Source: Octopus sinensis
Lineage: Eukaryota
Assembly (NCBI RefSeq): GCF_006345805.1
Contig: NW_021833041.1
Span: forward strand, 62,001 to 126,000
Direction of reading: 5' to 3'
DNA: 64,000 bases
Positions 12,951 through 61,931 of this stretch are shown piece by piece; position 1 is the first letter of the stretch, and every line of letters begins with the position of its first letter. The translations under genes were made by a program, and so were the position numbers. The notes beneath the pieces were generated by a model. The model did no database searches. It saw nothing but the letters and a program-made list of their open reading frames with translations, and was not told the origin of the DNA.

Positions 12951-13333
12951 TTTTTTGTTCTCTCGGTTTCGCGTTAAATAAAAAATTCAATTCAAATAAA
13001 CTATTAACAAACTGTCAAATATTCTAAAACAACAAGGTTCAATACTGTGACGTATGATTTTCTAATCTAAAGTGAAATTTGTATAAAATAAACGATCTTC
13101 GCCATCGATCGGTGACCAATACTTTGAAAACTTTGCATGAGTTTTCATTTGATACTTCTGGTATGTCTGAGTAAACATTCAACGGTGATATTTATGTTCA
13201 TCATTAAAACTAATCTATAGAAACAAATCTTATAATTTTAATAATTATACTTAAAGTTTATCAATAGAATTTGTTCTATTAAATATATATTATTTCAAAT
13301 AGTAAAATAAAAATTCAAAAATATTGAGGTCAT

Positions 13334-27270: not shown

Positions 27271-28187
27271 TGAGTTCATGTTGTTCTCGTACTCACAAAT
27301 TATTCTCTTACGGAAGGCCCGGTTTGACTCGAGGCGGCCTAAGTCCGAAGATTACCAGCGCCAGTGGGACGAGATTGTATGTCGTTCTTTGTACGAAGAA
27401 CTCACCCCGAAACTTAACCAACACAGGCTCGCCTGCCCTTGTGCAGGCTGTCATCCAGGCAGCGGTGCTTGGATTGATGCTTTCCCCCTCCCTTCAATTT
27501 GGAACCTCCTGGACTCCGAGTGCCTAATACAGTCGGACCTCGGTTTGAGCCACTTGGTGGCTCATAAACCGAGGTTGTATCATAAACCGAGGTTCGCTAA
27601 TAATCCTAATTAACAGTACTTTAAGTAAAAAATAGTTCACAAGAAACAGATAGAAACTGTTCATAAGTTATACTTTTTTGAAATAATGCGTAATCTTTTC
27701 TCCAAAACGATTTTTATCCCGTAAATTAATCATTATTTTTTTCCTTAGGGCGTAGAAATCATTTAATAATTCTGGAGAAAGTTTGCATATATTTTCCTCC
27801 ATATTATTAATAAGAGTCAGTGGATCTATGATGTCTGTTGATTCAGGCCCATTATAAAAATTTATTTCGCTTTCAAGCAATTCTTCGACAAAGACTTCGT
27901 TCACCATTTCTGTCAAGTCCGTATGAATCTTCGAATTGATATTTATTGTTTCCTCCCATCTACACTCAAAAATTTTTTTCCAACAATTTTGAATTTGATT
28001 TGAAGTTACATTGGCCCAGGCTTCAGAAATTAGTTGCATCACATTCCGTAAATTGAAACTTTTGATTGCTTCCAAAAAATTGCTTCTATTTTCACAAATG
28101 CATACGAATTCGATAAGTAAATTACTGTAATTTGTCTTCAGTGCTTTAATTATGCCCATATCCAATGGCTGAACTAACTATGTAGTG

Positions 28188-31817: not shown

Positions 31818-33623
31818 GTCTATGAGAACTAGCATTATCCAACAACATTAATATTTTTCGGTTTTCAGTAAGCATTCTGGTATTTAATTTAAAAACCCAG
31901 CTTTTAAAAATTTCAGTTGTCATCCACGAATTTTTAGAGAAAGTACATGACGTTAAAAACATCAGGAATTGTTTTAAGCACCGAGGGTTTCCATATTTGC
32001 CGATAATTAAAGGCTCCAGTTTCTCTCCAAGATAACTGCAGCATAGAGGCTAACCCTTTCCTTGTGCTGCTTAAAACCAAACAAATTTTCACCACATTGT
32101 ACAAATGACTTAGTTGGTGTATTTTTGAAATAAAGTGCAGTTTCGTTGCAATTAAATACATTTTCTTTACCATAATAAACAACTTTTGTATCTAATTCTT
32201 GGAAAAAATGTGGGAGCATGGATGTATCTGCGGAACCCTTTTCACCACACAATGTAAATTATGTGTCGTTTCTTGAATCTTTGAAGCCAACCATTAGACG
32301 ATTTGAAATTATTCAATGATAATTTTGAAGCGACCATCGACCCAATTTTCTTAATGGTCGGTCCAGATAAGGAAACTTTTTCAAGTCGCAATTTGTGAAA
32401 AATTTCGAAAACTTTAAGATCGAGATTTTTAAGCTTTTCAGAATCACTAGTTTGCTCGGATAAATCAGAATAAATAGTTCCATTATCAAGAAAAGGGAAA
32501 TCTTTTTTTATACGTGAAAATGTAGCCCTGCTAACTTTGAAAATTTCCGCAATTCTGCGCTCTAAAAGCTGGTTCCGTTTAATATATTGGGCTATTTCGA
32601 GTTTTTTTTCGTGATCAATTTTCATTTTAGGCATCTAGAAAACATAGAACAGTGGAAAATACTTTAACATAGATAACAACATGACAAGGAAAAAATTCTT
32701 TAAAATAAACGATAAAATATATAAAATAAAAATAATTATATTACAAAATATTTAGTTTATAGCAATTTTTAGATGGCTCATAACGAGGTCTATTTTTAAT
32801 TGATTTTTACAAACCCCTTAGGAAAAAAGCAGTTTCAAAAAACGTGGCTCAAAAATAGAGTTTGTATTATAAAGCGAGTATAGATCATACCCGAGGTCTG
32901 GCTCATAACGAGGTCCGACTGTAATCACTATCTCCTTACTTGTCGGGCTTAAAATCTGTCAGGCCCATAAATGTCGCTATGGCGGAACTGTGGACGAATT
33001 CGAGTTACATCTCCTCTTCTGCCCCTGCAGTGCAGGCCTGCGCATCGCCACAGCGAACTGAACGACATCGTGAAGTGTTACCTCGAAGCCGCCGGGTGCC
33101 GTCCGTCCTCAAACCTGTCGGTTTGGACAGAGGTGACGGCAAACGCCCTGACGTCTTAACTACATTCCCTTTTGAGCAGGGAAAATCTTTTATATGGATA
33201 TTCTACCTGCTGTGACACATTCTCCAACGTGAGTCTTGCCGTGTCGGCCGTCGACTCAGGCTTTGCTTCCAATCGTGCCGAAGATCTCAAAATCCTTAAG
33301 TATGCTCACCTCTCCAATTTCGTTTTCACAGTTATCGCCATTGAAACTTCTGAGGTCTTTGGCCGTAAGTCACTTTGTTTCCTACGCTGGTTAGGGAGAA
33401 AGATCGCCTAAAGAAGGGACGACCCAGGAGAGTCTTTTTGGCTTCTTCAACGCCTCTCCATTGCCGTAATCCGCGGCAACTGCCTCGCAATCCGCGAGGC
33501 TGGGAAGGCGCCCTAAATTGTGTAGTCTTCAACAATCTTTCTCCCTTTTCTAAATCTCCATAAATTAACTTCTTACTTTTTAAAAAAAAGTATTAATTTA
33601 TTAATGTTGTTACTTTGACTGGT

Positions 33624-36600
33624 ATGAAAGTAGACTACGGAAAATTGGACTCTCTCTCGGATTTCCTTAGGAAAACAGTCCTAAATAACCAAGTTTTTTT
33701 AAAATTGTACAAAAAAGAACCCTATCACCGGTCTTGTCTGCAGTGACGTCCGATTCCGCCATGCCTGGGTGCGGGACAACACGTACGTGGGGGTCAGTCT
33801 CTGGGCACTGTCCATCGCCTACAAAAAATCAGACCACAACGAGCACAAATACTTGGCCACGGAATTCGAAAAGGTCACATGTTGAAAAAAATAGAAAGCT
33901 GGCAGTCAAATTAATGCGAGGACTCCTCCGTTGTATGAGTGGCCAGAAGGCAAAGGTCACCGCCTTCATTGGCTCGCAGAGTCTGGGGGATGCCCTCCAC
34001 GCCAAATACTCCGCGGACTCGTGTCTCCCAGTGGTGGGGGATTGGGACTACGGACACTTGCAGGTGGACGCCACTTCTCTCTTCCTACTCTGCCTTGCCC
34101 AAATGATTGCAGGGGGTTGGATTCACTCACTCTTTTAGGCCTCCCTTTGATTTTCAATGCCGATGAGGCTTGCTTTGTCCAGAATTTGATTTTTTATATC
34201 GAAACAGCTTTCCGTCTGCCAGTTAGTGCATTCGGTCAGTTTAGGACTACGGAATATGGGAACGCGGTGATAAGACCAACCACGGAATGCCAGAACTCAA
34301 CTGCAGTTCAGTCGGAATGGCAAAAGTAGTGAATATGACTATATTTTAGGCCGCATTGGAAGCATTGCACCATTTGAATTTATTTCCTGCCAGTTCAAGC
34401 GGGGGAAGTGTGGTGTTTTCTATTTTGGATGGGGCATGTCGTTGTGAGGCAGTGCTCAATTCGATGCTCCCCCGTGAGTCCATATCGAAGGTGTGTTGAG
34501 TGAGGTGAGTCCCCAGGAAGTGGACGCAGGGTTACTGTCGGTGATCTCCTACCCAGCATTCGCAGTGAGTGACCCAGAACTGATCCAAGTGACACGGAAG
34601 GAGATCAGATGTAAGCTGGAGGGGCACTACGGGTGTTGTCGGTTCATTAGAGATGGGTACAACACAGCAGTGGAGGTGTAGTGTGGTGAATATAGGCAGG
34701 ACAGTGGTAGACTGCACTACGAACACTCCGAGTTGAGAGCATTCGAGAATATCGAATGTGAATGGCCACTTTTCTTCATTTATTATGTCATTGATTGTGT
34801 GTTTAATAACCAATTGGAGAAGGTGGCATTCACTGGTTGCACTCACAGGCTGCCCACTACTACGATCGAGTCACGTCTCTGATGACTAACACCCTCGTTA
34901 TCCCGGAGATGTACATGGTCCCTCTACAAAATGTATTCACACTCAGTCAACAGATTTCCAACGAGTATCGCAAGCCGGGGAGTCAGACTCGATATCCGGT
35001 CGGCCAGATTCCTCATGTTTGGTCACATGCCCTCTACGTCGTCGCCTCACTCCTTCTTTTTGTTGGTTTTGTGGCATTTATAAGAATCTGGTCGACCCGG
35101 GGGAGATTGACCCACTCAACCGACGCATTCTCACTGCCAAGAAGACTGACTTGGTCGTCCAGGGTGGCTGCCTTCCTAACTGATGAATAGTCTCCATTAT
35201 AGCGGAATGTGAGAATATTAAGGACATGTTGAGTTCCTGTGGTGTCTCCGCCTACATGGTCGAGGATCTGCTCCCCCTCGAGGTGTTCAGAGCCCGGGCT
35301 TTGAACAGTTTTTTCAATTTAATTGGTCGGTTGAAAGTTCTAGAACATTCAGGAAACAACGAGAGACTTGGACTGTATGGGAGGAGGTCGGACGATATTG
35401 GACTGATGGGGACCAGTCACATCTACAAAATATGTTCCACGACAATGTTCTTCCTTCCCCGGGTCCCCTCTGATGTGCTATGCCCAGATTGCTGATGTGG
35501 AGTCCTTCTACTTGGGATCTGACCCCAACTACATGATCGATGCCATCAAACACGAGATTGGGTACCTCGTCACCTCCTGGAAGGGGGATGGGAGGCCTGT
35601 CTACCTCGTCTATGTCGGCAAGACTTACCTGAGTCCCCACGTCCTTATATTTGCCAGCCAAGAACAGCACTCTCCACCCAGCACTGATTGGGCTTGTTCA
35701 GAAGATCAAAGATGGCTTTATCTCAGGATATCGGTAGATTCCTTTGATCATGGCTGGCAGAGTGGACTTGGGGTCACCTTTGGACTTTATCGACACCTCA
35801 TCGACCATAAACCTCGAGAACACTCTTGCCAATGTCGATGAGAGTAGTCCACTTTATATTCCCCAGATAGCTCAATTCACTTCGATCGAATCAGAAAAAG
35901 CTCGAATTTAAGTTGGGATGACAGTGAGCTTCAAAAAACAGAGAACGACTCCAAAATATGCTCACTCCCCCGAAATGGGTCTATCCGGAAGTCAATGTCC
36001 AGCCAGGCTCCTGATTGGTGGTCCCCTCCACAGATGAGTAGTTTTGAAAGCAATGGTGAAAAAGTGTATTATTGCAGAGAATAAGGCATCCCTCAAGTCG
36101 TTCTACACGTCGGACTGCAGGCTGAGTTCATCAGTGGAGGATTTGTTGAGTGCATTAAATGAGACCACTTCATTGACAGAACAGGCAGAAGTGGCGAACT
36201 GTCTCTATTTGAAGACGTTGGTTAATTGATTATATAAAGTGGGTCACTGGACACTCAATTGGGGGAGGGAGTCAGTTTGGGTGACCTCTTTCGGGATTTG
36301 TACTACAAATGTTGTAATTGTAAACATTGGTGTCTTGTCCGATACACTGCAGGGGTGTTGTCCAAGAGGGTGGATGGCCTGGATGAGGTGCCTGTCCAAA
36401 ACATCCTTTTAGGCCTTGACTGACCTGATTATCCACCACAAACAGGTCTCCTTTGGAATCCCTGAACGAATCAGGTTCTTTTTAATGTTTTACTCTCAAT
36501 TAGGAAGTATGGAGAGAACGTGGAGGAGAGAGTTATTGAAAAGTGACATTTGCAGTATCATGTCCATAGACTGCTCTCCCCAGACGAGATCATGGGAGTG

Positions 36601-37683
36601 TTGAGAGAGATCTATTCCACTGATTTGTGCAGTCAGTGTCTCTCCCAGGTACGACTGGATGTCACTTTGTGTAGGAACTGATCATTTATTTGGCTTCTTT
36701 TATTAGAGCAGATCCCAATATATTTAAGCGGATGTTGAGGATCCGGATTGGTCTGATCCTCAAACTACTGCACAGTGAAGTGATGAGAATATACAAGTTA
36801 AACGGTGATGTGATATTATTATTCTATTTAGATGAAATAGATGCAATGATTCAGTTGAGTTCACTCAGTCCATTTGAATTGAAAAGACTACTGTATGATA
36901 CACTCATTGGGAATGAAACACATTCATTGTTTGGTTATTTGTATTCAATTCATTCAAGTATGTGATGAGAGGGTATGTCAGCGAAGACAGTCCATTATTC
37001 TTCCACCAATGGTAGTGTGAGGGGATTGTAGATGATAAGGAAAGTGTCCACAAGAAGGGGAGGTGGATAAGACGTCGGGAGGTTGATGGATGTCTCGACA
37101 GTGTGCCTGAGGACTTTTATTCTCGGATATGGAAGTTATTAATGCATGTACTACCCAGTCAAATGATGCCCAATTAGTGTTCGGGGGGACTTATTGTGGC
37201 CAATCAGAGGTTTCACTCCATGCTGACTGACGAGGTATGTCCTCCCTATGAGTTAAGATGACTGCTGGGGAGATGAAGTTTGCCTTGGCATTCGAGAAAG
37301 TAATTGGGTCGATTCGTTACCCTGAGTTGAGGCAGCTGTACATAGAATGTGCTGTGGTACTCCAACTGGTGGCGAGTCGGAGTCAGCCCAGTCTGAGTTT
37401 TAATTGGCTTAATTTCGATCGAATATTGAATGAGGCGAATGAGATATTCCTTGCTGACCAGAGTCGGTTGGAGGGTCGTTCTGTGGAGTGTTGTGTTGAG
37501 TATATTGGGAGACAAAAGCCTGGTATTCTGAAATGTGGTGGTGTGGGGGGGATTTGTTATTATTTGTATGATACTCCCCCCTCTGGTCAGTATGGGACAA
37601 TCACCTACATTAGTCGTGCCATTGCCACTCTTGTTCAACTTCCTCGCAGTGATGGTGATATTGTTGATTGTCGTATTTCCTAA
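33624..37683 (+). CDS. PHKA: Phosphorylase b kinase regulatory subunit alpha, many mini-introns
   Basis: NQ|[62 protein letters not shown]|[27 protein letters not shown] (alpha-type), [22 protein letters not shown]-terminal CaaX CRIS*. Confidence 0.93.
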
Positions 37684-47989: not shown

Positions 47990-50900
47990 ATGATATTTAT
48001 CACATTTATTTAAAAGTTATGTAATTATTATATAAATATAATGTTTTTAGATTTTTTCTAAATGATTGATCTTTATTCCAAAAAATTTTGGTTTATACGA
48101 GATCTAACACCTTGGATCATTCAAAATTTTGGTAAGAATGTGTCGGAAATGGTATTAAAACTATTCATCACTTGTTAGAACATACCAGCTCACTACACTT
48201 TAATTTCTAATGAAAAAAATGACCAAGAACTAAACATGTCAACCGCTGTTTCACTTGTCCAAAAAAAGAATAGCATAATATTTATTTATAAATCTGATTT
48301 ATTCATTAATTTATTGGTAAATTAAACAACTCGATTATTCTTAGAATAACTCTACAAATGAGCTGATTCACGATATATTATTTAAATTACTGGAAAGAGT
48401 TGTTGAATCGATTGTCCATCCAGTTTATTATATAATAAAAACCCATTTCAGATAAAATCAGATATTCCAATAATTGACTGTTCGCTCATTCTTCACAATT
48501 CGTCATTTTGCACATGTCTTGTTTTCCATAAGTTTATTAATCGTTAGATTCATCGATTTTGTTTGACTATTAATAATTTCCGCGACTTTATTAAACTATC
48601 GTTCAAAGCGATTTTTGATTTTAAACTCATTGTCTCAAAATCTACAATAAAAAAGAATTATTTATATTTTGAGGATCTTATCAACGAGGCGTTAAGAAAT
48701 CACAAATTTCTTCCACAAATTTCAAAGAGCAGTTAAACTATTTATATAATAATTATTTTAGCATTTATTTTCATCACCGACGGCGTTCTTGAATCTACCA
48801 TGTGTTGTCGGCTTGACGAACTTCTTTTGATTATGAATAAGCTAGAAATTTCCTGCTCATTTGTGACAATTGATAATACTAATTATACCGGAGTAAAAAA
48901 CAATTCCTTTTTTGAGTTCATTGCAAGAAGAACGTTTGGATCTGTTTTATATCATTCCGAATTTTTTAAGAAACCGCTAAATAATATTCAAAAAAATCTT
49001 GTCGGGTATATTTATGATCCAATAACTGTTTTTGTGGATGCTGAATATGAGTTATAAATTTATGTTTTAAATTTAGATCAAGTAATTCTCTTAAAATTAA
49101 TGTATCAAATTTAAATTTATTTGAATTTATTCTTATCCGATGTCGACGGGGCTTTCGATTGGGAAGAATGTATAAAATGAGTAACCTTATAATTATATTG
49201 TTTCAGGAGGAATTGATAAAGTAGTAATCATTTTATATTGTTGTTATTCCGAGATTGTGACTGTTATTTTGACAATATGTGTACACAGTATCGAGAAATT
49301 GTCTTGTTTTTTAGAATAATATTTAGAACATTTGAAGTAGAATATAGTGTCTGGGGTTCTCGGGACTTTATTAATTTTTATCAAAATGAAACACTGTTAA
49401 TTAATCCTCCAATTTTTTTCAGTCGTGTGAGGAGTGTGATTCATTCAGAATTATGCTTGTATTACTTATTTTAATTTTTTTAGAATGAATAACGTAAATA
49501 AATTGTATCCGCTTTTTAAGAAATTTTTTTCTAAAAATTTTTCATATTCCAATAAAAAACGTTTCGAAAAAAAGTTTTTATATATTCTAAATTTAGGAAT
49601 CTTTCGTTGAATTATATTTTGAACAATTTGGAATTATTTTCGTTTTTTACTTGCTGATTTAAATTTAGAAAAAACATCAATTTTTTTCTTATTGGTGAGA
49701 ATAAACAACGAAATTATGAACAGATTTGTACTTTGTTTAACAAAATTTTCAATCCAATTAAAATTAAAAATAACATATTTGTGAAACCTTTTTCTAAATT
49801 TTCGTGAGAATTAACATAATTTAATTATATAGAAATAGTGGATGTCTTGCTGATATTACATCACATGAATTTTTGTTTGTAATCAAACTATACTTTCCAA
49901 TTGAACTAAATTTTGATGAAGTCTATGAGGTTTTAAACGGCAACGCATTCTTAGATCACAAGTGAATTAATCTGTACTCTTGAAATCAAACAAAATGATT
50001 TTATTTCAACTTCGAGACCTCTTGATATTCTGATCATTAAGTAATAAAAGTTTAGAAAATATTAGATTACATGATGATTCGAGGATAATAAATGATTTTG
50101 CGCAAAACTCGGCCTTAATGGAATTTTCAGACAAATGCATTAAAAAATATACCTGGAAATGGAGACTCGATATGAACGAAGATTCTTTTTCTAAACATAA
50201 TTTCTTTTTAAAAATGAGAGATCTAATTATTAGGTAAATTTTTTCTTAATCGTAATTCTAAGAGAAAGAGTAACTAGTGACAGGTTTTTTCTTTGTTCAA
50301 GTAAAGAAAACCACATCCATATGTGTCTTCTTAAACATGTATGCTATAAAAATGACAAAACTAAAGATATCCACCGACGATCAACAATTTCTATCTATTA
50401 ATGACGAATTTATAGTAGTTCAATATTTTTTACATCGTCATATTGATGGAATAAACTCAATATTTATTTCGGAACTTTGGTTAGAATTTAAGCATGATTT
50501 TAATCGATATTTTAAAGATCATTCTTATAATAGTTATGCAAATTATGTAAATTTTGATTTTTATATTTTTTAGATTTACAATACTGACCGTGAATGCTTC
50601 ATTTCTTTATTTTCTGCATATTATTTGTTGACAACTAATCAAAAGAAAATGTGACCTATTTGTATTATGTTTGTAGCGAGGAATTTTCGTGTCATACTGA
50701 AAACAAATGTGAACCACTGATAACTCTTTTTTCTCGCGAATTCAACATTATGAGTGTTTTGTATAGATCTGATTTTATTGAATTATCTTTTCATTCTTAC
50801 ACTGGTTGAAATAATACGTTTAAATTTATAGTTTTCGAAAAGAACAACGATAATTTATTCCTATTGTTAATAGAATCACTTAGAGAACTGATTCCAATTG

Positions 50901-53900
50901 AAATTAAAATTCATGAAGAAAATTACACAGAAATAACAAACTTCATTAAAAGACTTGTTTCGTTATCTAATAATGTATGAATTGTATTGAATTTTGTCTA
51001 GATTACTTATAGCGAATCACAAAATTTAGCTTGGAGATGTTTTTCATATACGCTTGAAAATGACGATTTATGCATTTGTCTTTTTCCGCTTTCTAACAAA
51101 GATTGGATAATATTTAAGTCGGGGCATCAAATGAATAGTTTTTTGTGATTTTATTCTTTCTAGAAAATTATTCATCAAAAATTTCAATCTTTGTATTTTA
51201 TTTTCAAATGAACAACTTTAATTTGAATTCTCCTGAAAGGTTTGGTCACTAATTTATCACCCTTTTAGAACTTTCTTACGAAAGAACGCTCGTAATCAAG
51301 GTAACGCCCAGTTTTCTGTTACTCTGACAGGGCTATTTCTTTACAAAATAATTCCGGAATACTTTAAAAACAGACATAATGAATCATTAATTATTTTAAG
51401 AAATGTTCTAAAAAACATCATAGAAGAATACATTAAGGTCTACATTCATGGTGAATCGTCATAAATTTATTCTTAGGAATTTATTTTTCTCTCCACATGA
51501 ATATTGGTGTTGACTCTGTTGATTTGAATCTTGCATTACTGGAATGCCCTCATAAAAAAATTGGGATCGATTTAGAGCCATTCATTTTGACCAGTTGCCA
51601 ACATTTTTCTTTCTTAATGTCTTCATATAGTACCGAGATGATTTCCATGCTATTTCAGTATTTACTTGATTCCGACTTATTGAAATCCAACAAACAGTGA
51701 TTATTATAACTAATTAAACGTAGATTATTAAAAAAGAATAAAAATTTTCACATTCCTTTTTCGATTTTCGAAACTCACTGTCATCGTAAACCAGAAATGG
51801 CATATTTAAACGAACATATAAAAACTATAATTTCTAGGTTTTTTAAACAGGTAGATATGCCTGATTTTAATCATCTTTTCTATCTTGTATTTATATTGCT
51901 GATTAATACTGAATAGAACAATGAGTCGCTTAGCGGCAGTGAACATATTTATACGACAAAATATCAATTTCCATTGTTCATCCAACTTAAATATTTTTCT
52001 TCCGTTTCTCAGGAAGCTGAGAGTATTCAATATGATTGTTTACATACTTGTCTATGTTGATTTATTTAATCTTATTTTAGCACCATTTTTCAGTAAACAG
52101 AAAAATAATATATCGCTTGACGACGTTAAAATTAGTCTTCAAATTCATATCTACAGCTGTGGAGGAAACATAAATGAATTTCAGGACGATGATAGTCATG
52201 GGTTGATTTATTTCATTCTAATATAGAAAAATACCGCAATCTGAAGATTTTTTTATAGGATTTCCAAAAAGTGTTTGCAATAAATTAATGTATCTTGACA
52301 ATGAAGTAATTAAATTTATACTTATTAGTTTCAGATAAATTTACTGCTTGCAGATGCTACCATCTGTAATCTTTTATCTTTATCTTTTACATCCCGTGCT
52401 TTACTCAACTATATCATTTCATTCATTACATCGAAGAGCAACAAAACCAACTGTCAGTTCAAAAGCATACCATTGCAATTTGCATGCGAACATGACTCTG
52501 GGATTTCATATCTTTTGAACGTTTCTTGAATTTAGAATATTCTAGAAATTACGGGAAATTCGGGTGAACAAAACTCTTACATGCGATTTTATCAATTTCA
52601 CCGGAAACCAGTTTTTTATTCATATTATTTTATAGATTTAAAGGGGATCAATTTTTACTTTCGGATTGCTGTTATTTTTCTTTATCGCAATCAAAAAGGC
52701 TGATATATTTTGGTAAAATTTTTAGGCACAAAAGTGTTTCATTATGCGATCCGCCTTCAAAATTCAATATTTCGGATGTATTGCGATGCAAAAGTTATTC
52801 TAATTTAACAAGTTTAAATTATATTAATCATAAATTTCAGCCGACAATTGTGGAGATAAACTCAATTCGTGGATATTTTTTGCATTATATAAGCAGAATA
52901 TAGTAATCTATTTTTATTACCAGTAATTGTATTTACAATAACCATTTAGAGAATATGGACCTAATATTCCGAATATGTTATCCCATCAATTCGAACTTTA
53001 TAAGGAATTGATAAAATGTATATATTTGGCAGTTCACGAAACCAATCAAGTATTGTATGGTTAGTTATCTCATAAGCATTGCTTATTGGAGAATTTGTCC
53101 ACCAGCGGGTGGTGCAGTGACCTCCTTTATATGAGCTCTTCAAACAAGGCAATTTCATAAATTTCTTTTTATTGTTTAGTATAATGACGGATTTTCCGAA
53201 AACATTGCATTCTTCAGATGTAAAAAGCAATTTTCCATAAAATTACGTTTTCCCCTATGCTTTCCAGAAATGATTACTTCTGATATTTTTTGCGAATTTT
53301 CTGTTAAGAATAGACCTTCAATGTATGTTATCGAGGATACTTCTGAATTGCATAAAAATGTTTTCTATCTAACGCTTTCTTTTAAAAAAAGTTATTTTGA
53401 TAAATAATTGCAGAGAAATCATTTGAGACTACCTCCAAAAATGTACGTAAAAATTATGTTGTGAATTTTTCTGACCAAGGAGATAATCTTTATGAAAAGT
53501 TTTTGGTAATGAGCTTTTTTGGAATTAATAAGCCTGGTTGAAATTATTGAAAAAGTTTAAGGATTAAATTTCCGAAAATCTTTTGCTCAATTTGTCAAAG
53601 ACCGAATCAATTCAATGTATACCAAAATGATATTAAAAGAATATCGAGCAGGAATTGTATCTACTGTTATAAAAGATCATCTATATGTTTATTATGTGTT
53701 GATAAAATTAGTTTCTTCGGCATTCTGGATCAAGGCCTTTAGTGAGTTTTTCCATTGTTCTTTCTACGGAAATTCACTATCTTTACGATTATATTCTTAA
53801 TTACTTTATCAGAATATGTATGGACAAGTCTTTTAGAGTGAGCAAAGTATGGCATTTTTTTATTTCTACAGGGAGAGTCAAATAATCTGTCCACGTCTTC

Positions 53901-56900
53901 TTCGAGCATAATTGATTATATTCACGTTAATGTAGACGATTTGAACAATTTTTGTGGTTAATTGTGATATTTAATTCAGGCATTTCCACACTAACAATTC
54001 AATGGAATCAAGATAAGTTTAGACCCTTCAGGATGCTTTTTGCAGATAACATTGAAAAACTCAAAATATCGACTAAATTTAATATTTCAAAAATCAGCGT
54101 ATCTCAATGTCCCAATAAAGGTTTTAATTTCAATTAATATTTTACAGATCTTATTTTTTCAGCTCTTTTGGATAGAATTGAATCATTCGTATCTGATGAT
54201 GGTATTAAATTGATGCTAATGTTAAGGATTTTCTATAAATATAAGTGTTTGGGAGTTCGAAGATGGAAATACGATTCATATCATACAAAAGATCAAATAT
54301 CTGATGACCAAATCGATTGTAGAATCAATTTTTGAAGTATTGCTACTTCCCGCCCTCGAAAACAGGAGATTTGAGTTTCTAAGTAATGAAGGAATTGGTT
54401 TTTCATTTTTATTTACCATAAAGAAATACAGCAAAAGTTAAACAAATCTGCACCTCGTCATTTTCAGGATAGATTTTTGGTTAACCTAGTTGTAACTACC
54501 GCAGAATACATTTGTTAGCAAAACCAATGCTCATTTGTATTTTACGGAATCGAATTTATCTAGCTCTTCGATTTCGCCGAATTTTGGATGTGATAAATTT
54601 AGAGATGATACTATTTTATCTACGTCTGTCAGTAATGTTGTCGATTGGCTTCGATTTTCGTCATTTCTCGGTTATTACATTTGTGTATAGATTTTAGATA
54701 TTCCACGTATAAAATCTTTTCGCGTCCAAGTACCTAATTCACTTTTTTCTTTTGAAATGTTTCGTGATTGTATCAAATTTCTCGATACTTTACTTGAATC
54801 GTTTCTAACTATTGACTGTTACCAAAAATTTTACCACGACTACGAGAAAATCTCGGATTTAGTATTTTCACGCTTATTAAATTATAGGAAAATTATTATG
54901 CCTGTGATGTTTCGACTACTTTTTTTGCACTCTTCAAGCCGCGTGAAAATTTAACACCTTTTGAGCAATTTCCCGATCCTGCTAATTTGAATAGAAAGTT
55001 TGTTTTCAATGAATATCTTGAATATCGTTTTGGTGATAAAAATGAATCTTTTAGTACATATAAAATAATTGTTCACACGTGTTCTAAGGAGGTTCCTAAA
55101 TTTTGTTAAAATATTTAGCTTAATTTATATGTTTTATCAAATGTTTCGAATATAATTGGGCGTATAAGAGAATCCATTGAAAAGTTGAATTCTTTTTTCT
55201 TCGCTAAAAGTTGTTTTTTGGAACTTATGACAAAATGTAAATTGGGGTCACATTTGAATCAAGAAGAGGTGGGTTTATTTGGTTCACGTATATTTAGTCC
55301 GTTTACAGTAAGGCACTCGAATCACTTTCACTACCTTTTGATCGTACCATATATGAGTCGATAAAAACTTTTGATTATCATTCAGAGGATATAAATATTT
55401 CCAGTTTGTACGAACGAACATCATTAATCCACATTAATAACACCAAAAGTTTATATTTTATATTTATATTAGAAACGACAAAGAATTGTATAATCAATCA
55501 ATGCTATACCTCTGTGGCGATGCAAAGTGAAAATGACTTCTATAGATTCGATAAAGTAGTGCTATGCCACATATAATATAGATAGAATTCGATAAATTAA
55601 TGATGTCGTCACATTTGTATGCCAATTCTGGAGTTCCAATGCTTATTTCTAAAAATAACAATTATTCTCGCCTGTCATCTGATGATTCTCAATCTTGTGC
55701 TAGTCCAAGGAAGGACGTTTATTATATAATTAAATTTTTAGTTTCGTTTTGGAAGTTTTAGTAGAAAAAGTATAAATTGCAATTTAAACTTTCATCGCGA
55801 TTTACCATCATTAATATGTTTTGTTCGTCACCTGAAAATTGAAATTTTTAGATATTTGTTTCAATTTGATTTTAGACCAATTGAATTCAAAAAGTGTATT
55901 ATTTTTAACACGTTTTAGTGATGAGAATTCAGACAGTTTATATTCATCTACTTTTATATGCTATTTTAAAGCACTTGGACTTGTTATATTCAAATATATT
56001 ATCCAGAATAATTTTTTGAGCTGTTTTTTATATTTTTATATCCCATCAATTTCTGGGTCTATTCTCCCTATTTATGGTACTAAATTATTCAAATCCATTT
56101 TTAGGCCAGTGTGTTAAGATTTGGAAAATGCTTAACATTGATAAATTTATTATAGATTTTACTTGTCATTGCGTTAAACAGTCAATATATATAAATTTGT
56201 CTGGATGTCGTGGATTTCTATGTAGACTCTGTTCTTTAGACCCATTTTTGTTAATTTCTGAACTATCTGTTCTCTTTGGCAAAAATAAACCTAAAAAAAT
56301 TGGATTTCGCTCAAGTTTTGATTGTTTAATTATAATCCTAGGAGAATTTACAATTTCTGATATTCCAATCCCCTCTCTTTTTTTAGAACAATTTCTTGTT
56401 TCTGAATGTATTAACTTCGAAATTCATCTTCTCAACTCTGGCGAAGATTTTACCAATTTTGTTTATAATCCATCACATAAAGAAGAAAATTTGGAAATTT
56501 TTTGTATTATTCGGCTGAAGATAACTGATCCACATTTTTTTAAATATGAAACTTTTGTATTTACGACTAATACTAAACTCTTCTCCGATGTTTCATGTTT
56601 TGGGTCTGATTTAAAATCTACTAAAATTCCGGAAGTTCTTGAAAGACCTGAAATTTTAAATATTCGAAGTTTTAATCATTCTATTTTCTCATCAGATTCT
56701 CAAAGTACGGAAGACAAAACTTTGTTTGCGAACTCTTTTCATAACATTTTTAGAAACTTTGTTCAGAACCTTATTTATGATATATCCCTAATGTGCTACA
56801 ATAAATATATGTGGAAATCAGTTTTTTACAGCAATGACATTATGTGTCTCGGAATGAATCAGAGAATAAAAATGATTTTGAACGATTGTGTAAGTTTCTT

Positions 56901-57386
56901 ATATTTATCTGAAAATTAGAAATTATCCAAATCTGGATATGATTTATTTTCATTTTTTCTAACTAACCTCACCCAAATACATTCATGTGGGTCTGTGGGT
57001 CTACTATCACCCGCAACTTTTAGATCATCTCATGTTGAAAAATTATTCAAAATTTTAACTAGAAAATTTGGACATAGATTTTGTCTTTCGTTTAATTTTG
57101 ATGGGCCAAAAAAATTCAAAGTATTTTAAAGGAATTCTAAAAAATGTTTTAGATCATTTTAAGTCCATATTCCCCTACTCATTTTGCTTTGATTATCGAA
57201 TATCACACTAATCCTGTTTCAAAAGCTGTAAATAATATTTATTTGTATTTTTAGCAAATTTATGGCGCAACGTTTGATGATGTGGGCCGAACGTCTGCCG
57301 ATACTGTGTTAAGTAATAAGGAGTTTATCCTCACTTTTGTTCATCAGTTCGCATTTTCCTGTTATTATTTAATGACTATCAGTTAA
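47990..57386 (+). CDS. SZT2: Large, highly divergent SZT2-like protein (KICSTOR scaffold) with many mini-introns; exact start uncertain
   Basis: NNSTNELIHDILFKLLERVVESIVHP (cf. recalled [26 protein letters not shown]); FIFITDGV...CSFVTID...FFEFIARRTFGS (cf. IIVITDGV...CSFVQVG...MKFIAMATFGS); IRCRRGF...FEVEY. Continuous exon/mini-intron pattern to stop at 57384-57386. Confidence 0.65.
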
Positions 57387-57491
57387 ATTTTATTATGAAT
57401 AAAAAACAGTTAATTATTTATTTAAGATAATATTAAAAATATAAATAACATGTTATTTGATAATACTTTTTAATTTGTTGTGACGGCTATT

Positions 57492-60400
57492 ATGGATTCT
57501 TCAGGTAAATACTTACTATTTGTTATACTAATGCAGATTTTGACGAAGAATTTAATTTTTTACCTAGAAATAAAAATCAGACAAAGGAACAGGCAATATA
57601 TGGTTTTTAATACAGGCTTATTGACTAATAGGAATATGGGCCGATGACGAGGTCGAAAGGCCTCAGAGAAAGTCACATGTAAAGTATTCTGGATTTGTCA
57701 AGGGTGGCGTTACGGAAAAGGTTGAATTTACTTAATTAAATGTTTAAAGATATCTTTTAATAGGAATGTTTTCAATAATGATAAAAAAACATCAAAAGTT
57801 ATCCAAGCAGACAAGTTTGAAGTTTTTCGAACTTTTAATTAAAATAGTCAATTTGGGAAATGGGAGCGTCACACTAAAGGAATTGGAATGAAACTCCTTT
57901 TAAAAGTTTTATAAATATTAGCAATTCATCAGCAAGGTTTTAAACTTGGGGAAGGATTGGGACAGTCTAGAAAAGGAATCGCTACCCCAATTATTGCTGT
58001 TAAAAAAGATGGAAAAGACAGTGTGGGGTTTAGGCAGACCGTACATACGGATACTGTTACAATTAGGCACATTTTTTGCCTAAATGCCTTTTTGCACAAA
58101 AGGTCTATTATTAAATAATTAATTTAAGCTATAATTTAATTAAAATAGATTTATCTACAACGAGTTATAATGCCTTAAATGCTTAAAAAATTGTTAAGGT
58201 CCTAAAAAATTTTTTAAGGTCCTAAAAATTTTTTTAAGGTCTTAAAAATTTTTAAAATAAATTATTTTTAAATGTTACAAAAAATATTTTAAAATAACAA
58301 ATTAGGCACGCTATAAATTACTTTTTGTGTTCAAATGCCACGTGTACGTTCTACATAAAGTCTAAAGCTCTAAAAGCCTATGAAACTTACGTAAAAGAAT
58401 TCACAGTGATTAAAGGCAGTCTATATTGTAAAATATGTATGATCTACGTCAATGCATCAAAAAAATATTATATTGATCAGCATAGACAATCTACAAAACA
58501 TCTAAAGCTTTGAGTAATTTAAAATTATTTTTTTAGATAACAATGAAGGATTCCAACAATCCTTAGATTCCCTATTCAACGGTCAAACCGAAACGGAAGA
58601 CTTTCAGAGTATGCCGATGGAAGTTGCCAAAGCCTTTTCTGAAGCAAACATTCCTCTTCATAAGCTCAATAATCCAAGCTTAAAGGGATTGTTTAAAATT
58701 GAAATTTCGCTTCCTTCCCAGTCAGCCTGTCGCAATTGTATTCCTGCAATCAGTGAACAAAATTATCCAAGTATAAAAGTGATCTAAGGTTAACAAATGA
58801 TTAATTTTTAGATCTCAAAGATTTTTATGGTTGTTGACGAGGGTGACGTAAATGGACAGAAGTTTGTAGTTGTTCTCATTGGGAATATCGCTTATCCAGA
58901 GAAGACCTATTTAATTCGTGTGAACCTTATATGAATCTGTAACTGCTAACACAATTCTTCAGATTATCGATGAAGAGATTAAAAAATTCGAGATTATACG
59001 CAATAATTTTCTTCTTTTTCTTTCTGATGCAGCCCGTATATGATTTGGGGGTTTGTTGAATTATTTTTAGCCGGAAAAAAATTGAAAATGCTTTATCCTA
59101 GGATGTTCCATGAACATGTGTGCACATTTGTTACATAATTTGCTGTCTCAGAGTAAAGGCGTATTATTCGGACGTTGATAATCTTATTGCGACTATAAAG
59201 ACATCAATAGTGAAAAACAAAACTAGAAAAAAAATGTTTTCTACAATTGGTTATCCGCCCGACGTCATCATAACTAGATGGGGGTAGTTGGCTGCAAGCA
59301 GCATACTATTATGCAAATAATTTTGTATCAATTGCTGAAATTGTGGAGAATTTCAAAGACGACGGAATATTAGTTAAAAAAGTAAAACAAGCAATTGAAT
59401 CGCCAACCTTAAGAAAAAGTCTAATGGAAATAAATGAAAATTATCAGATACTTAATCAAATATTGAAAAAAATGGAATCCACAAGTTATACAATAAATGA
59501 TGCACATTCAGATCTTTGTTTGTTAAAATTTCCGTCTGATAATGCAGAAATAAATGAATACATACAAAAAAGATTACACAAAAATGACATAGAATCAATT
59601 ATAGAAATGGAGAAAGTAATATCTCCCCTGAAGAATATGGACTAATAAGAAAATGTCAGTGTACATCATCAACCGTTGAAAGAGCATTTTCTATGCTTAA
59701 AAAATTAATTACTAAAGATAGAGGTTTCAATGCGGAAAATGTCAAAAATTATTTAATACCTTACTATAACAAATAATTTTTTACGACTTTTTGATTTAAT
59801 ACCTTATTAAAATGTGCCTAAAAATGTAGAATAAAGTCCTAAAAATTAAAAATAAAGTCCTAAAATGCCTATTTTTAAGGTCCTAAAAATAAATTTTAAG
59901 TGCCTGAAAAAAATTGCCCTAGTTACAATAAATCAACAGGATCATTCTGTTGATAAAAAACCAATAATTAAGAAGAAGTGGAAAAAAAATTCATCCACAG
60001 TTCAAAATTTGATATCTACGGAAGAACTAATAAAGAAAACACTCAAAAATGAAGATTCGAATAAACATTATTTAGCACAATATGACAGCAAGGTGATCGA
60101 TTTGACTGGAGCTGAAGCAAAGATATATTCGGGTAATTTGTGTACTTTCCAGTTCAGATTATCGTTTTTTTAGCAGGAAGTCTGAGGTTACTGAAACTCC
60201 GTCTTTTTCCGTAAACGAATTAGCCCATAATTTGAATTTGTTGGTCGAAATTTCTGAAAATGAGATTCTGGAAAACGAAAAAGCGTAATTCAAACAGCAA
60301 GCTTAAATTGTTAGAATACAAAAAGAGACTGAAACTATATTTGATTTGAAATTTCAAGTTGAGCAGATAAATAACCAGGAAGATAAAGACAGAGTAGAGA

Positions 60401-61931
60401 TCAGTTCATTGGACAGTGTGCTTCTTTTGATTGATGAATGCATTATCCGACAGGAGAATGGTACAATGTCGGCAGCATTTCTCCATGAAATATTTAAATC
60501 GATTATTATTGTCCAACCAACTCTCTTTATTGAACTTGGATTGTCTAATCTGGCAACATCGTTTCTACGGCCTCTTGTATTTTTTAAACACAATTTTTGT
60601 CAGTTCGAGGAGGAATTTCAAGATGAACCGTTTCTTGAGAATCCCTCTATGGGAATAGGTTTTATGCGTTATTGGAGAAGAGTTTTGTTGAGTGAGGAGA
60701 TGCGCAAAGCATTGGAAACACTTCCAGGATTTTTATCCCCAGAAAATCGTCTATGGAGTCCATATGATAGACTTATGTGGGATTTGTGGATGCAACGAGT
60801 TCAGATTGTTGTAAGGGATGAGTGGAATCCTCGAGAACCAGACAAACTAATGCTTTTCTTAGATATTTGGCGACCTGTTACTTCTGTTTGGATGTTTAGG
60901 CATCTTATAGAAAAAATAGTGTTCCCAAAAGTCAAGGAAGAAGTGAAAAACTGGTCTCCTTTAGCTGATTCTAAATTCCACTTTACGCTCATTCCCTGGT
61001 TCACATTATTTGGTACTTTAATTCATCCCTTATTTGTAGAATCGGAACTTTTATTGCTTTATGAATTGATCATTGAAAAAATTGAGGATTCCCTTTCTAC
61101 TTGGTATCCAACTGATACCTCTGCGCATTGTGTGCTACTTCCGTGGGTTTCGATTATTCCCAACGCAATTTTGGAAACTTTTCTTATTAGAAAAATACTT
61201 CCCAAACTGTCTGTGTATATGAAAAACTCGTTTATTATCGATCCACGTGATCAGAAACTTGGTTTTTTATTGTTGGTTATTTTTCTAGATGTTTGGTCTG
61301 CATTTATAATTTGGCATGATATTGTGCCACAACATCACATGGTTCAGTTAATTGATGAACTTTTTTTTCCTGTATTTATGTATGTTTTGGAAGATTGGCT
61401 GCGAGGTGCCCCTGATTATTCCGAGATTAATAAATGGTATTTTGGCTGGAAATCAATGTTTCCTCCAAAATATCTTCACGACGACGTTTTAAAAGGTTTT
61501 AATTTTTTATTATATAAGATAAATTTCGCGAATCTTTGTCAATGATGGAATGTGCATTTACGGCGACACAAGATGGTTCATTTAATAGTAATTCTTTTAA
61601 ACGCACTTCCCAGAATTTGGTTTGGTACCTGTTTTATAATATTAGGATTCGATGATGTCTTTTAATGCGAGTCCAGCACTATCTCCTATAGCTCCTAATA
61701 CATTCAAAGATTTGGTCGCTCAGAAAGTAAATGTTTCTAATTGTTTTGTAGGCTGCAGATAATGGAATTGAGTTTTATCCAATTGCATCAAAATTTATTT
61801 CTGGAAAGCAAGTTTATCGATTTGGAAGCGGACAAATATATGTGGATAAAAATATAGTTTATATTTTTATCAATGGAAGCTGGTTGCCTGAATCACTTCA
61901 CAACATTATATCTCGTCGCTTATATGTGTGA
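57492..61931 (+). CDS. TFIP11: Tuftelin-interacting protein 11 (Ntr1/Spp382 spliceosome disassembly factor), interrupted by a hAT insertion at 58064-59921
   Basis: QTKEQAIYGIWADD; G-patch WERHTKGIGMKLLLK|QGFKLGEGLG; KVIDLTGAEAKIYS; ELAHNLNLLVE; GCFC/NTR domain (ORF 60346-61545); C-terminal FKDLVAQK...GKQVYRFG...YVDK...WLPESL. Confidence 0.92.
58064..59921 (+). mobile_element. hAT transposon with CGGBP1-like transposase (1858 bp)
   Basis: TAGG..-type imperfect TIRs. Perfect 8-bp TSD GTTACAAT (58056-58063, 59922-59929). GTCCTAAAA subterminal repeats at both ends. BED finger LYCKIC...QHRQSTKH, LSDAA, ITRWG, C-terminal CTSSTVERAFS. Confidence 0.9.

What the first reader, a model, noticed from the sequence alone, without database searches (positions are those of the whole stretch)
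58041..59940. A 1.86-kb hAT inserted in a coding exon of TFIP11, with in-frame cryptic splice sites that could excise it
Seen: the TSD GTTACAAT lies inside the codons ...GAT ACT GTT ACA ATA AAT CAA CAG GAT... (DTVTINQQD), so the element splits an exon between the G-patch and the KVIDLTG motif. The rest of the gene splices cleanly with no other lesion that I could find. The GT opening the left TSD (58056), or GTACAT at 58041 (a donor also used in the PKC gene), pairs with CAG|G at 59937-59940. These would remove 1884 or 1899 nt (both multiples of 3) at a cost of 6 or 11 residues in a poorly conserved linker. Established knowledge: TFIP11/Ntr1 recruits Prp43/DHX15 for spliceosome disassembly and is normally essential. 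Inference: this is either a very recent heterozygous null, a redundant copy, or a TE being tolerated as a new giant intron in a genome whose introns are ~30 nt, and in a gene that itself controls splicing.
Basis: partly seen in the sequence, partly recalled or inferred. Interest (0 to 1): 0.72.

Follow-up and report, generated by a model that had tools for sequence, protein, structure and literature searches.

The report
Decayed hAT transposon splitting the TFIP11 gene
A broken 1.86-kb hAT transposon sits inside a protein-coding exon of an otherwise intact splicing-factor gene (TFIP11) in an animal whose introns are about 27 bases long; the sequence alone cannot show whether this is a damaged allele or a transposon spliced out as a giant intron.

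Summary
An 1858-bp element (58064-59921) is flanked by a perfect 8-bp duplication, GTTACAAT. It interrupts the linker between the G-patch and KVIDLTG of a TFIP11 gene that otherwise gives a clean 767-aa protein.

The element belongs to a compact hAT family. Five relatives in other organisms have 8-bp duplications and TAGGGC ends, and a family profile matches Hermes transposase. This copy is dead: at least six frameshifts lie inside conserved blocks.

They are weak, though, and 16% of random exon positions offer such a pair by chance. The GT that opens the duplication follows from the family's target preference.

I tested whether the element landed in an existing 33-nt intron. That stretch scores like exon, so this is unlikely.

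Key logic: if the transposon decayed where it sits, the intact gene must still be under selection, so the element must be removed from the message. If it arrived already dead, the allele may be a recent null sheltered by an intact allele. A census of other copies, or RNA and DNA reads, would decide. I lean slightly to the sheltered null (0.45 against 0.33). No public data from this organism, probably a dicyemid, were reachable.

The parts
57492..58063 (+). TFIP11 5' part: ATG, five mini-introns (57505-57536, 57603-57631, 57721-57749, 57815-57847, 57906-57932), TIP_N and G-patch, then the start of the linker exon up to the insertion
   Evidence: Gene model and translation; Pfam TIP_N, G-patch, GCFC; 99% coverage of metazoan TFIP11
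58041..58046 (+). Candidate donor GTACAT, codon-aligned, 15 nt upstream of the duplication
   Evidence: PWM score 2.86 bits: 16th percentile of true donors, 54th of exonic GTs
58056..58063 (+). Left target-site duplication GTTACAAT; its GT is the second candidate donor
   Evidence: Donor score 3.76 bits, 28th percentile of true donors. Five of the six target duplications seen in this family start with GT
58064..59921 (+). hAT element, 1858 bp, in the same orientation as TFIP11
58064..58078 (+). Left terminal inverted repeat TAGGCACATTTTTTG
   Evidence: A perfect 12-nt inverted copy lies at 59809-59820
58191..58254 (+). Left subterminal repeats, three copies of TAAGGTCCTAAAAA at 20-nt spacing
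   Evidence: the repeat finder families D1-D3
58335..59776 (+). Transposase pseudogene. It covers residues 9-458 of 461-aa relatives but switches frame about eight times (near 58355, 58505, 58927, 59037, 59120, 59140, 59283, 59620)
   Evidence: tblastn against P0079; family profile against the three frames; junction contexts
58514..58536 (+). Host-type mini-intron (23 nt) inside the transposase gene
   Evidence: Intron score 14.3 bits, against a mean of 11.1 for true introns. It lies where the family alignment breaks
58779..58811 (+). Host-type mini-intron (33 nt, in frame, three stops) inside the transposase gene
   Evidence: Intron score 10.8 bits. It appears as an insertion relative to the family profile
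59832..59901 (+). Right subterminal repeats (TAAAGTCCTAAAA twice, TAAGGTCCTAAAAA once)
   Evidence: the repeat finder families D1, D4
59865..59867 (+). ATG inside the element that is in frame with the downstream TFIP11 exon
   Evidence: ORF 59865-60173
59907..59921 (+). Right terminal inverted repeat AAAAAAATTGCCCTA
   Evidence: Its reverse complement TAGGGCAATTTT matches the TAGGGC(G/A)ATTTT ends of relatives
59922..59929 (+). Right target-site duplication GTTACAAT
59937..59939 (+). Candidate acceptor CAG; the next base, 59940, is codon position 1
   Evidence: PWM score 4.93 bits: 36th percentile of true acceptors, 83rd of exonic AGs
59930..61931 (+). TFIP11 3' part: rest of the linker, KVIDLTG, GCFC domain, five mini-introns (60152-60173, 60285-60314, 61496-61518, 61620-61645, 61733-61751), stop codon at 61929-61931
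   Evidence: Pfam GCFC 7e-42

Best explanation
A dead copy of a compact Ac/Hermes-type hAT transposon inserted by cut-and-paste into the exon that encodes the poorly conserved linker of TFIP11. It duplicated its 8-bp target, GTTACAAT.

Read as assembled, the message meets a stop 17 codons into the element. The product would be a 158-aa fragment carrying only TIP_N and the G-patch.

The most likely status is a disrupted allele that arose recently. A transposase from elsewhere in the genome would have mobilised a copy that was already defective. The allele would survive because an intact TFIP11 allele is present in the same, probably clonal and highly heterozygous, parasite population. The assembler happened to keep the insertion haplotype.

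Shown: the element, its family, its decay, the exon position and the intact rest of the gene. Inferred: that the lesions pre-date the insertion, and that an intact allele exists.
For: - Perfect 8/8 duplication, and a host gene with no lesion in 2304 nt of CDS or at any of its 10 ordinary mini-introns. This is what a young insertion looks like.
- The unspliced reading truncates after the G-patch.
- The flanking splice candidates are no better than ordinary exonic GT and AG, and occur by chance at 16% of exon sites.
- No window gene has an intron longer than about 40 nt. The PKC gene (13328-15829) and a roughly 2600-aa gene with about 50 introns are all compact.
- The window's features point to a dicyemid: introns of about 27 nt, and PKC and TFIP11 closest to spiralian or other protostome proteins at only 32-49% identity (PMC13644364; PMC6543705).
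- For Dicyema japonicum, 1.24% heterozygosity, DNA decontaminated of host reads, RNA pooled from the dicyemids of seven octopuses, a haplotype-merged assembly and 49% repeats are reported (PMC6736024). An insertion polymorphism could easily be captured there.
Against: - The copy carries at least six frameshifts inside blocks that are contiguous in all 26 relatives. The other transposons I checked in the window look just as old. This pattern suggests an old fossil rather than a recently mobile element.
- If the lesions arose in place, a dead TFIP11 allele should have picked up about 8-11 frameshifts over the same time. It has none.
- No second copy of the family is in the window, so nothing shows that the family is active.
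Confidence: 0.45

Rival explanations
1. The insertion is old and tolerated. The whole element is removed from the pre-mRNA as a 1884- or 1899-nt intron. The donor is the GT that opens the left duplication (58056) or GTACAT at 58041. The acceptor is the CAG ending at 59939. The resulting TFIP11 lacks 6 or 11 linker residues.
For: - Both pairs keep the frame.
- The linker varies in length among orthologues.
- The element looks old, with at least six frameshifts, while TFIP11 shows no lesion. If the decay happened in place, this implies continued selection on a gene that carries the insertion.
- The family's target preference puts a GT[T/A]A at the left junction of most insertions. That matches this genome's minimal donor, GT[A/T] (PMC13644364).
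- The mean intron length in D. japonicum (38 bp) exceeds the dicyemid median of 27 bp reported for Dicyema sp. So a tail of longer introns probably exists (PMC6736024, PMC6543705).
- Introns derived from transposons, including full-length elements with inverted termini, are known (PMC12130899, PMC9860276).
Against: - The sites are weak: 16th, 28th and 36th percentiles of true sites.
- At 16% the chance expectation is not negligible.
- The intron would be about 70 times the normal length, and no long intron is seen in any window gene.
- Pairing of the element's ends does not bring the sites close together. The predicted duplex joins 58063-58075 to 59809-59821, and its energy is not beyond shuffled controls, at -35.4 against -28.0 +/- 5.1.
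- The element contains seven AATAAA motifs on the sense strand.
Confidence: 0.33
2. The element landed in a pre-existing 33-nt intron (58041-58063 plus 59930-59939, GTACAT...AACAG), not in an exon. That intron happens to be a multiple of three and free of stops. The insertion would then be an ordinary intronic transposon.
For: - The stretch starts GTA and ends CAG. A length of 33 nt is within the observed range.
- A PKC intron starts with the same GTACAT.
- Priapulus TFIP11 has an intron right after the G-patch, about 4-5 codons upstream of this position.
Against: - Its combined intron score is 5.1 bits. True introns score 11.1 +/- 2.9, and only 1 of 61 scores lower. Exonic decoys score 3.3 +/- 5.0, and 34% of them score as high or higher.
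- A real intron would be both a multiple of three and stop-free only about one time in eight.
- Orthologues have residues aligned to this stretch (TERSERSLI against TVHTDTVTI). Without them the linker would be much shorter than in any orthologue.
- The Priapulus intron is not at the same codon.
Confidence: 0.05
3. This locus is a redundant TFIP11 copy, a recent duplicate that has just been inactivated. An intact paralogue elsewhere does the work.
For: It would explain how a null in an essential gene is tolerated. Only this 64-kb window could be searched for a second copy.
Against: - The copy keeps all its introns and an intact 767-aa frame, so any release from selection must be very recent.
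- No second copy is in the window.
- D. japonicum is reported to have a strongly reduced gene set of 5,012 genes (PMC6736024), which makes spare paralogues unlikely.
Confidence: 0.07
4. The element is removed at the DNA level in expressing cells, by somatic excision or programmed elimination. The assembled copy would be a germline-like state.
For: Somatic genome rearrangement, chromatin elimination and extrachromosomal circles have been reported in dicyemids (PMC6543705, citing Noto 2003 and Awata 2006). The element keeps both termini and its subterminal repeats.
Against: - hAT excision normally leaves footprints, and in an exon these would usually shift the frame (established hAT biology).
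- The left terminus TAGGCAC departs from the family's TAGGGC.
- This copy's own transposase is dead.
- Nothing links the reported circles to transposons. PMC6543705 found only mitochondrial domains in them.
Confidence: 0.04
5. Assembly artefact or split gene. Either a transposon copy was wrongly joined into the gene by the assembler, or the two halves are expressed as separate proteins: a 158-aa G-patch fragment, and a GCFC part starting at the element's in-frame ATG at 59865.
For: The in-frame ATG at 59865 exists. Repeats make up about half of dicyemid assemblies (PMC6736024).
Against: A perfect 8-bp duplication of hAT type exactly at both ends is the signature of real transposition, not of a misjoin. 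No promoter evidence exists. An in-frame ATG in an AT-rich 60-nt stretch is not surprising.
Confidence: 0.06

Closest known systems
Ac/Hermes-type hAT transposons (Hermes, hobo, Ac/Ds)
   Same: 8-bp duplication fitting nTnnnnAn, with GT at the start in 5 of the 6 insertions seen (the window copy and four of five relatives), as in the Hermes GTNNNNAC preference. Short TAG... inverted termini and subterminal repeats. The transposase has the C..H..N block, the RW motif and the C-terminal S..VER.FS motif. The family profile hits Hermes 2BW3/4D1Q at E=0.002.
   Different: The transposase is compact, about 460 aa against about 600. Relatives hit DUF659 far more often than the hAT dimerisation model (26 against 6 of 27). 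The N-terminal zinc finger resembles the U1-C/matrin type rather than BED. This copy is dead and carries host-type mini-introns.
Maize Ds/dSpm and C. elegans Tc1 insertions in exons that are partly spliced out through cryptic sites (Wessler and colleagues; Rushforth & Anderson 1996; cited from my own knowledge)
   Same: A DNA transposon in a coding exon. Potential removal uses GT and AG at or near the element's ends, which restores most of the frame with a few residues changed. Ds is itself a hAT element.
   Different: Those are laboratory or mutant alleles with shown RNA products and usually reduced function. Here no RNA evidence exists, and the normal introns are about 27 nt.
Introners and other transposon-derived introns (PMC9860276, PMC12130899, PMC11282704)
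   Same: An element with inverted termini and a target duplication inside coding sequence. The duplication could supply a splice site.
   Different: Introners are multi-copy, mostly short and non-autonomous, and are shown to splice at defined boundaries. Here there is one copy. The GT of the left duplication paired with the AG made at the right junction removes element+9 nt and shifts the frame. The in-frame sites lie outside the element.
TFIP11 / STIP / yeast Ntr1 (Spp382)
   Same: TIP_N + G-patch + GCFC architecture, with full-length alignment to metazoan TFIP11.
   Different: Only about 32% identical to the best hit. Shorter (767 aa). Interrupted by the element.

Membership tests
hAT superfamily (Ac/Hermes group) | 8-bp target-site duplication | tested here: met
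   GTTACAAT at 58056-58063 and 59922-59929, 8/8. Five relatives also have 8-bp duplications.
hAT superfamily (Ac/Hermes group) | Target consensus nTnnnnAn (Ac-type) rather than nnnTAnnn (Buster-type) | tested here: met
   T at position 2 in 6 of 6 duplications and A at position 7 in 5 of 6. Positions 4-5 are never TA.
hAT superfamily (Ac/Hermes group) | Short terminal inverted repeats beginning (T/C)AG | tested here: met
   TAGGCACATTTTTTG and TAGGGCAATTTTTTT. They are imperfect: the first 4 nt are identical, then two indels. Relatives have TAGGGC(G/A/C)... at both ends.
hAT superfamily (Ac/Hermes group) | Transposase with the hAT catalytic core and C-terminal dimerisation domain | tested here: met
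   The window copy alone hits no Pfam family. Its relatives (38-46% identical, full length) hit DUF659 in 26 of 27 and Dimer_Tnp_hAT in 6 of 27. The family profile hits Hermes at E=0.002, covering the C..H and RW blocks and the S..ER.FS tail.
hAT superfamily (Ac/Hermes group) | Intact transposase reading frame (autonomous element) | tested here: not met
   About eight frame switches, at least six of them inside conserved blocks.
TFIP11 / STIP / Ntr1 | TIP_N + G-patch + GCFC domain order over the full length | tested here: met
   Pfam E-values 5e-8, 1e-11 and 7e-42. 99% query coverage of metazoan TFIP11. Invariant G-patch residues are kept.
TFIP11 / STIP / Ntr1 | Recruits and activates Prp43/DHX15 for spliceosome disassembly; essential | not testable with these tools
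   Established knowledge for yeast and human. Not examined here.
Introner / transposon-derived intron | Splice sites at or made by the element's boundaries, so that removal restores the frame | tested here: not met
   GT at 58056 paired with the AG at 59921-59922 removes 1867 nt and shifts the frame. That acceptor scores 1.7 bits, the 2nd percentile. In-frame pairs need a CAG 10 nt beyond the duplication.
Introner / transposon-derived intron | Many similar copies acting as introns in different genes | not testable with these tools
   One copy in the window.
Introner / transposon-derived intron | Removal from mature mRNA is shown | not testable with these tools
   No transcript data for this organism in any collection searched.
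Ordinary mini-intron of this genome (for the 33 nt around the site) | Donor, acceptor, composition and length like the window's 61 introns | tested here: not met
   5.1 bits against 11.1 +/- 2.9. It falls within the exonic decoy range.

The most novel reading that the evidence does not exclude
An old, decayed hAT has been kept for a long time inside a coding exon of the only TFIP11 gene and is removed from every message as a 1.9-kb intron. The donor would be the GT that this family's GTnnnnAn target preference places at the left junction, or GTACAT 15 nt upstream. The acceptor would be a CAG 10 nt downstream. This would happen in an animal whose spliceosome normally handles 27-nt introns with minimal signals, and in a gene that itself takes spliceosomes apart. 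It would be a caught-in-the-act case of intron birth from an exon insertion in an ultra-short-intron genome.
Probability: 0.3. Interest if true: 0.65.

Novelty: new member of a known kind. Interest (0 to 1): 0.36.

Why it matters
If the element is spliced out, it would show that a spliceosome tuned to 27-nt introns with GTa/AG signals can accept a 70-fold longer, transposon-made intron. It would also give a concrete example of an exon insertion turning into an intron in an animal, which bears on how introns are gained.

If it is a sheltered null allele, it is an ordinary polymorphism. It is then mainly a warning that gene sets from haplotype-merged assemblies of clonal parasites can lose essential genes to insertion alleles.

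Either way, the compact DUF659-type hAT family is a usable marker for transposon activity in this genome. Its features are TAGGGC ends, a GT-first target and host-type mini-introns in this copy.

Tried and rejected
1. Pre-existing 33-nt intron at the site. I scored it with donor and acceptor PWMs, interior composition and length, all trained on 61 window introns. It looks exonic. The orthologue alignment and the Priapulus intron map do not rescue it.
2. RNA 'zipper'. I asked whether pairing of the element's ends could bring GT and AG within about 27 nt. Cofolding pairs the left end with an inner repeat at 59809-59821 instead, and the energy is not beyond shuffles.
3. Exact introner-style excision, from the GT of the left duplication to the AG at the right junction. 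It removes 1867 nt and shifts the frame.
4. Finding this organism's own TFIP11 protein, transcripts or an empty site. The best protein hit is 32% identical. Two exact-match scans of metagenome contigs, one with the left junction and one with the right end, found nothing.
5. Other copies of the element, or a second TFIP11, in the window. None were found.
6. Long transposon-bearing introns in neighbouring genes, as precedent. None exist: the PKC gene is compact at 13328-15829.
7. Rfam and tRNA scans to identify the organism found nothing.
8. Pfam on raw frame translations of the element, and on my frame-corrected 456-aa reading, found nothing significant. Family membership had to come from relatives.
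9. Sequencing error as the source of the frameshifts. They sit in short runs and dinucleotide repeats. But about 15 kb of host coding sequence in the same window has no frameshift, so I treat them as real.
Full report
**What is there**

Reading 56500-61500 and a script check confirm the anatomy. GTTACAAT occurs at 58056-58063 and at 59922-59929, and these are its only two + strand copies in the window. Between them lies an 1858-bp element (58064-59921). It begins TAGGCACATTTTTTG and ends AAAAAAATTGCCCTA.

Both ends carry subterminal repeats of TAAGGTCCTAAAAA-like units. A perfect 12-nt inverted copy of the left terminus sits at 59809-59820. The window holds no other copy of the element.

**The host gene**

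I built the gene model by dynamic programming over short GT..AG introns and then curated it by hand.

- With the element and one duplication copy removed, the CDS runs from the ATG at 57492 to the TGA at 61929-61931. It has 12 exons, 2304 nt and 767 aa.
- Its 10 ordinary introns are 19-33 nt long.
- Pfam finds TIP_N, G-patch and GCFC in that order.
- It aligns over 99% of its length to metazoan TFIP11. The best match is only 32% identical, to a nemertean, followed by rotifers and a priapulid.
- The insertion lies between the G-patch and KVIDLTG, in a stretch that varies in length among orthologues.
- Read as assembled, translation stops 17 codons into the element and gives a 158-aa fragment.

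**The organism**

- I collected 61 window introns. Their length mode is 25-29 nt. The donor consensus is GT[T/A][T/A][T/A] and the acceptor consensus is TTTTAG.
- Among 51 animal genomes compared, only myxobolid myxozoans and Dicyema japonicum have such introns (PMC13644364). A median intron of 27 bp was reported for Dicyema sp. (PMC6543705).
- The window's PKC is closest to mollusc, flatworm and arthropod PKCs, at 45-49% identity. No cnidarian is among the 120 listed hits.
- I therefore infer a dicyemid. This is an inference, not an identification.
- For D. japonicum, 49% repeats, 1.24% heterozygosity, RNA pooled from seven hosts and a haplotype-merged assembly are reported (PMC6736024).

**The element is a hAT, and a dead one**

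A frame-corrected reading of the element finds about 100 proteins of some 460 aa at 38-46% identity over their full length. Most carry DUF659.

I fetched five relatives with their flanking DNA. All are 2.0-2.5-kb elements with 8-bp duplications and TAGGGC... termini:

| Locus | Target duplication |
|---|---|
| L001 | ATGATAAT |
| L002 | GTAATGAC |
| L003 | GTAATGAG |
| L004 | GTTATTTA / GTTATTAA |
| L005 | GTTATCAA / GCTATCAA |

Together with the window's GTTACAAT, the duplications fit the Ac-type consensus nTnnnnAn. Five of the six start with GT, as in the Hermes preference GTNNNNAC.

A profile built from 27 family members hits Hermes transposase at E=0.002. The match includes the C..H..N and RW blocks and the S..ER.FS tail. 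Six of the 27 members reach the hAT dimerisation model.

The window copy spans residues 9-458 of a 461-aa relative. Against a profile built without it, the reading path runs f1, f2, f3, f2, f3, f1, f2, f1. At least six of these switches fall inside blocks that are contiguous in every relative:

- ...NL|YESV
- DAAR|YM
- HVC|AHLLHN
- HN|..RVK
- TRWG|SWL
- EK.|ISP

They sit in short runs or dinucleotide repeats. About 15 kb of host coding sequence in the same window shows no frameshift, so I take these lesions as real.

Two interruptions of the family alignment look like genuine host-type mini-introns. They lie at 58514-58536 (14.3 bits) and 58779-58811 (10.8 bits).

**Exon or intron?**

In the empty site, 58041-58063 plus 59930-59939 is a 33-nt stretch that starts GTACAT and ends CAG. 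It could be an ordinary mini-intron that happens to be in frame.

A combined score of donor, acceptor, interior composition and length gives 5.1 bits. True introns, scored leave-one-out, give 11.1 +/- 2.9, and only 1 of 61 scores lower. Exonic GT..AG decoys give 3.3 +/- 5.0, and 34% of them score as high or higher.

Orthologues have residues aligned to this stretch. Priapulus TFIP11 has an intron right after the G-patch, but it lies 4-5 codons away. The exon reading stands, and I leave about 5% for the intron.

**The proposed splice sites**

The arithmetic is right. The two options remove 1899 and 1884 nt, both keep the frame, and they give proteins of 756 and 761 aa.

| Site | Score (bits) | Percentile among true sites | Percentile among exonic GT/AG |
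|---|---|---|---|
| Donor 58041 | 2.86 | 16th | 54th |
| Donor 58056 | 3.76 | 28th | 68th |
| Acceptor ending 59939 | 4.93 | 36th | 83rd |

At random exon positions, an in-frame pair within the same distances exists 16% of the time.

The GT that opens the duplication is a by-product of the family's target preference. Paired with the AG formed at the right junction (CCCTA|G), it removes 1867 nt and shifts the frame. The element is therefore not built like an introner.

Pairing of the element's ends does not shorten the effective intron. No window gene has a long intron.

**How to read it**

Two facts pull in opposite directions. The host gene is flawless and the duplication is perfect, which suggests a young insertion. 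The element is as decayed as the other transposons I checked in the window, which suggests an old one.

If the frameshifts arose in place, a dead TFIP11 allele would be expected to carry about 8-11 of its own. It has none. The gene would then have stayed under selection with the element inside it, and the element would have to be removed from the message.

If the copy was already dead when another copy's transposase moved it, the insertion can be recent. The allele can then be a null sheltered by an intact allele. That is plausible in a clonal, highly heterozygous parasite whose assembly merges haplotypes (PMC6736024).

The window cannot tell these apart. I give 0.45 to the sheltered null and 0.33 to the tolerated giant intron. 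The rest is shared among the pre-existing intron, a spare paralogue, removal at the DNA level, and an artefact or split gene.

Removal at the DNA level is worth listing because somatic genome rearrangement has been reported in dicyemids (PMC6543705).

**Comparison with what is known**

Splicing of exon-inserted DNA transposons through nearby cryptic sites is known for maize Ds, which is a hAT, and for C. elegans Tc1. I cite these from my own knowledge. Transposon-derived introns are well documented, including some full-length elements with inverted termini (PMC9860276, PMC12130899, PMC11282704).

Even the most interesting reading would therefore be a new member of a known kind. It would stand out mainly for the ultra-short-intron background and for the identity of the gene.

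**Limits**

No reads, transcripts, proteins or other genomic sequence of this organism could be reached. Every statement about heterozygosity, splicing, paralogues or family activity is inference.

Noticed in passing
window 33526-37662 (+): A phosphorylase b kinase regulatory-subunit gene (Pfam KPBB_C 4e-24 plus GH15) is 42-49% G+C inside a window of about 30% G+C. It still appears to be interrupted by 20-30-nt mini-introns. The contrast in composition is unexplained.
   Followed up: partly
window 58514-58536 and 58779-58811: The hAT transposase gene carries two host-type mini-introns (intron scores 14.3 and 10.8 bits) exactly where the family alignment is interrupted. The relatives fetched from other organisms are uninterrupted ORFs. 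This suggests intron gain in a transposon gene, or long residence of the family in this lineage.
   Followed up: partly
window 58056-58063; L001-L005: Five of six target duplications in this hAT family start with GT, and the element's ...CCCTA end followed by that G always makes TAG. Every insertion of the family therefore creates a donor-like and an acceptor-like dinucleotide at its borders, but one base out of register for exact removal.
   Followed up: yes
L003 562-2727: A relative of the element sits inside an intron of a calreticulin gene, between ...YNIMFG and PDICGPG, on the opposite strand. It is in another organism's assembly (ENA ERZ21736675) and has a perfect duplication, GTAATGAG.
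   Followed up: yes
transposase family, profile positions 30-95 (window about 58400-58510): The N-terminal C2H2 zinc finger of this hAT family resembles the U1-C/matrin-type finger of U1 snRNP protein C (PDB 3CW1_L, E=0.006) rather than a BED finger. The match is borderline.
   Followed up: no
window 59865-60173 (+): An ATG inside the right end of the element is in frame with the downstream TFIP11 exon. A transcript starting in the element could therefore encode a TFIP11 that lacks TIP_N and the G-patch.
   Followed up: no
window 3480-4094, 21970-22374, 27668-28165 (-), 29976-31058: The window is rich in transposons. It holds a G+C-rich LINE reverse transcriptase, a Tc1/mariner DDE_3, a pogo-like DDE_1 and what looks by eye like a second hAT. 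That last element's two ORFs hit no Pfam family. The reading frames I looked at appear fragmented. All lie between genes rather than within them.
   Followed up: partly
window 54121-54147 and other exonic GT..AG stretches: Several in-frame, stop-free stretches of 24-27 nt inside apparent exons of the large gene at 48062-57300 score as high as true introns (up to 17 bits). ORF-based models may therefore miss some mini-introns in this genome.
   Followed up: no
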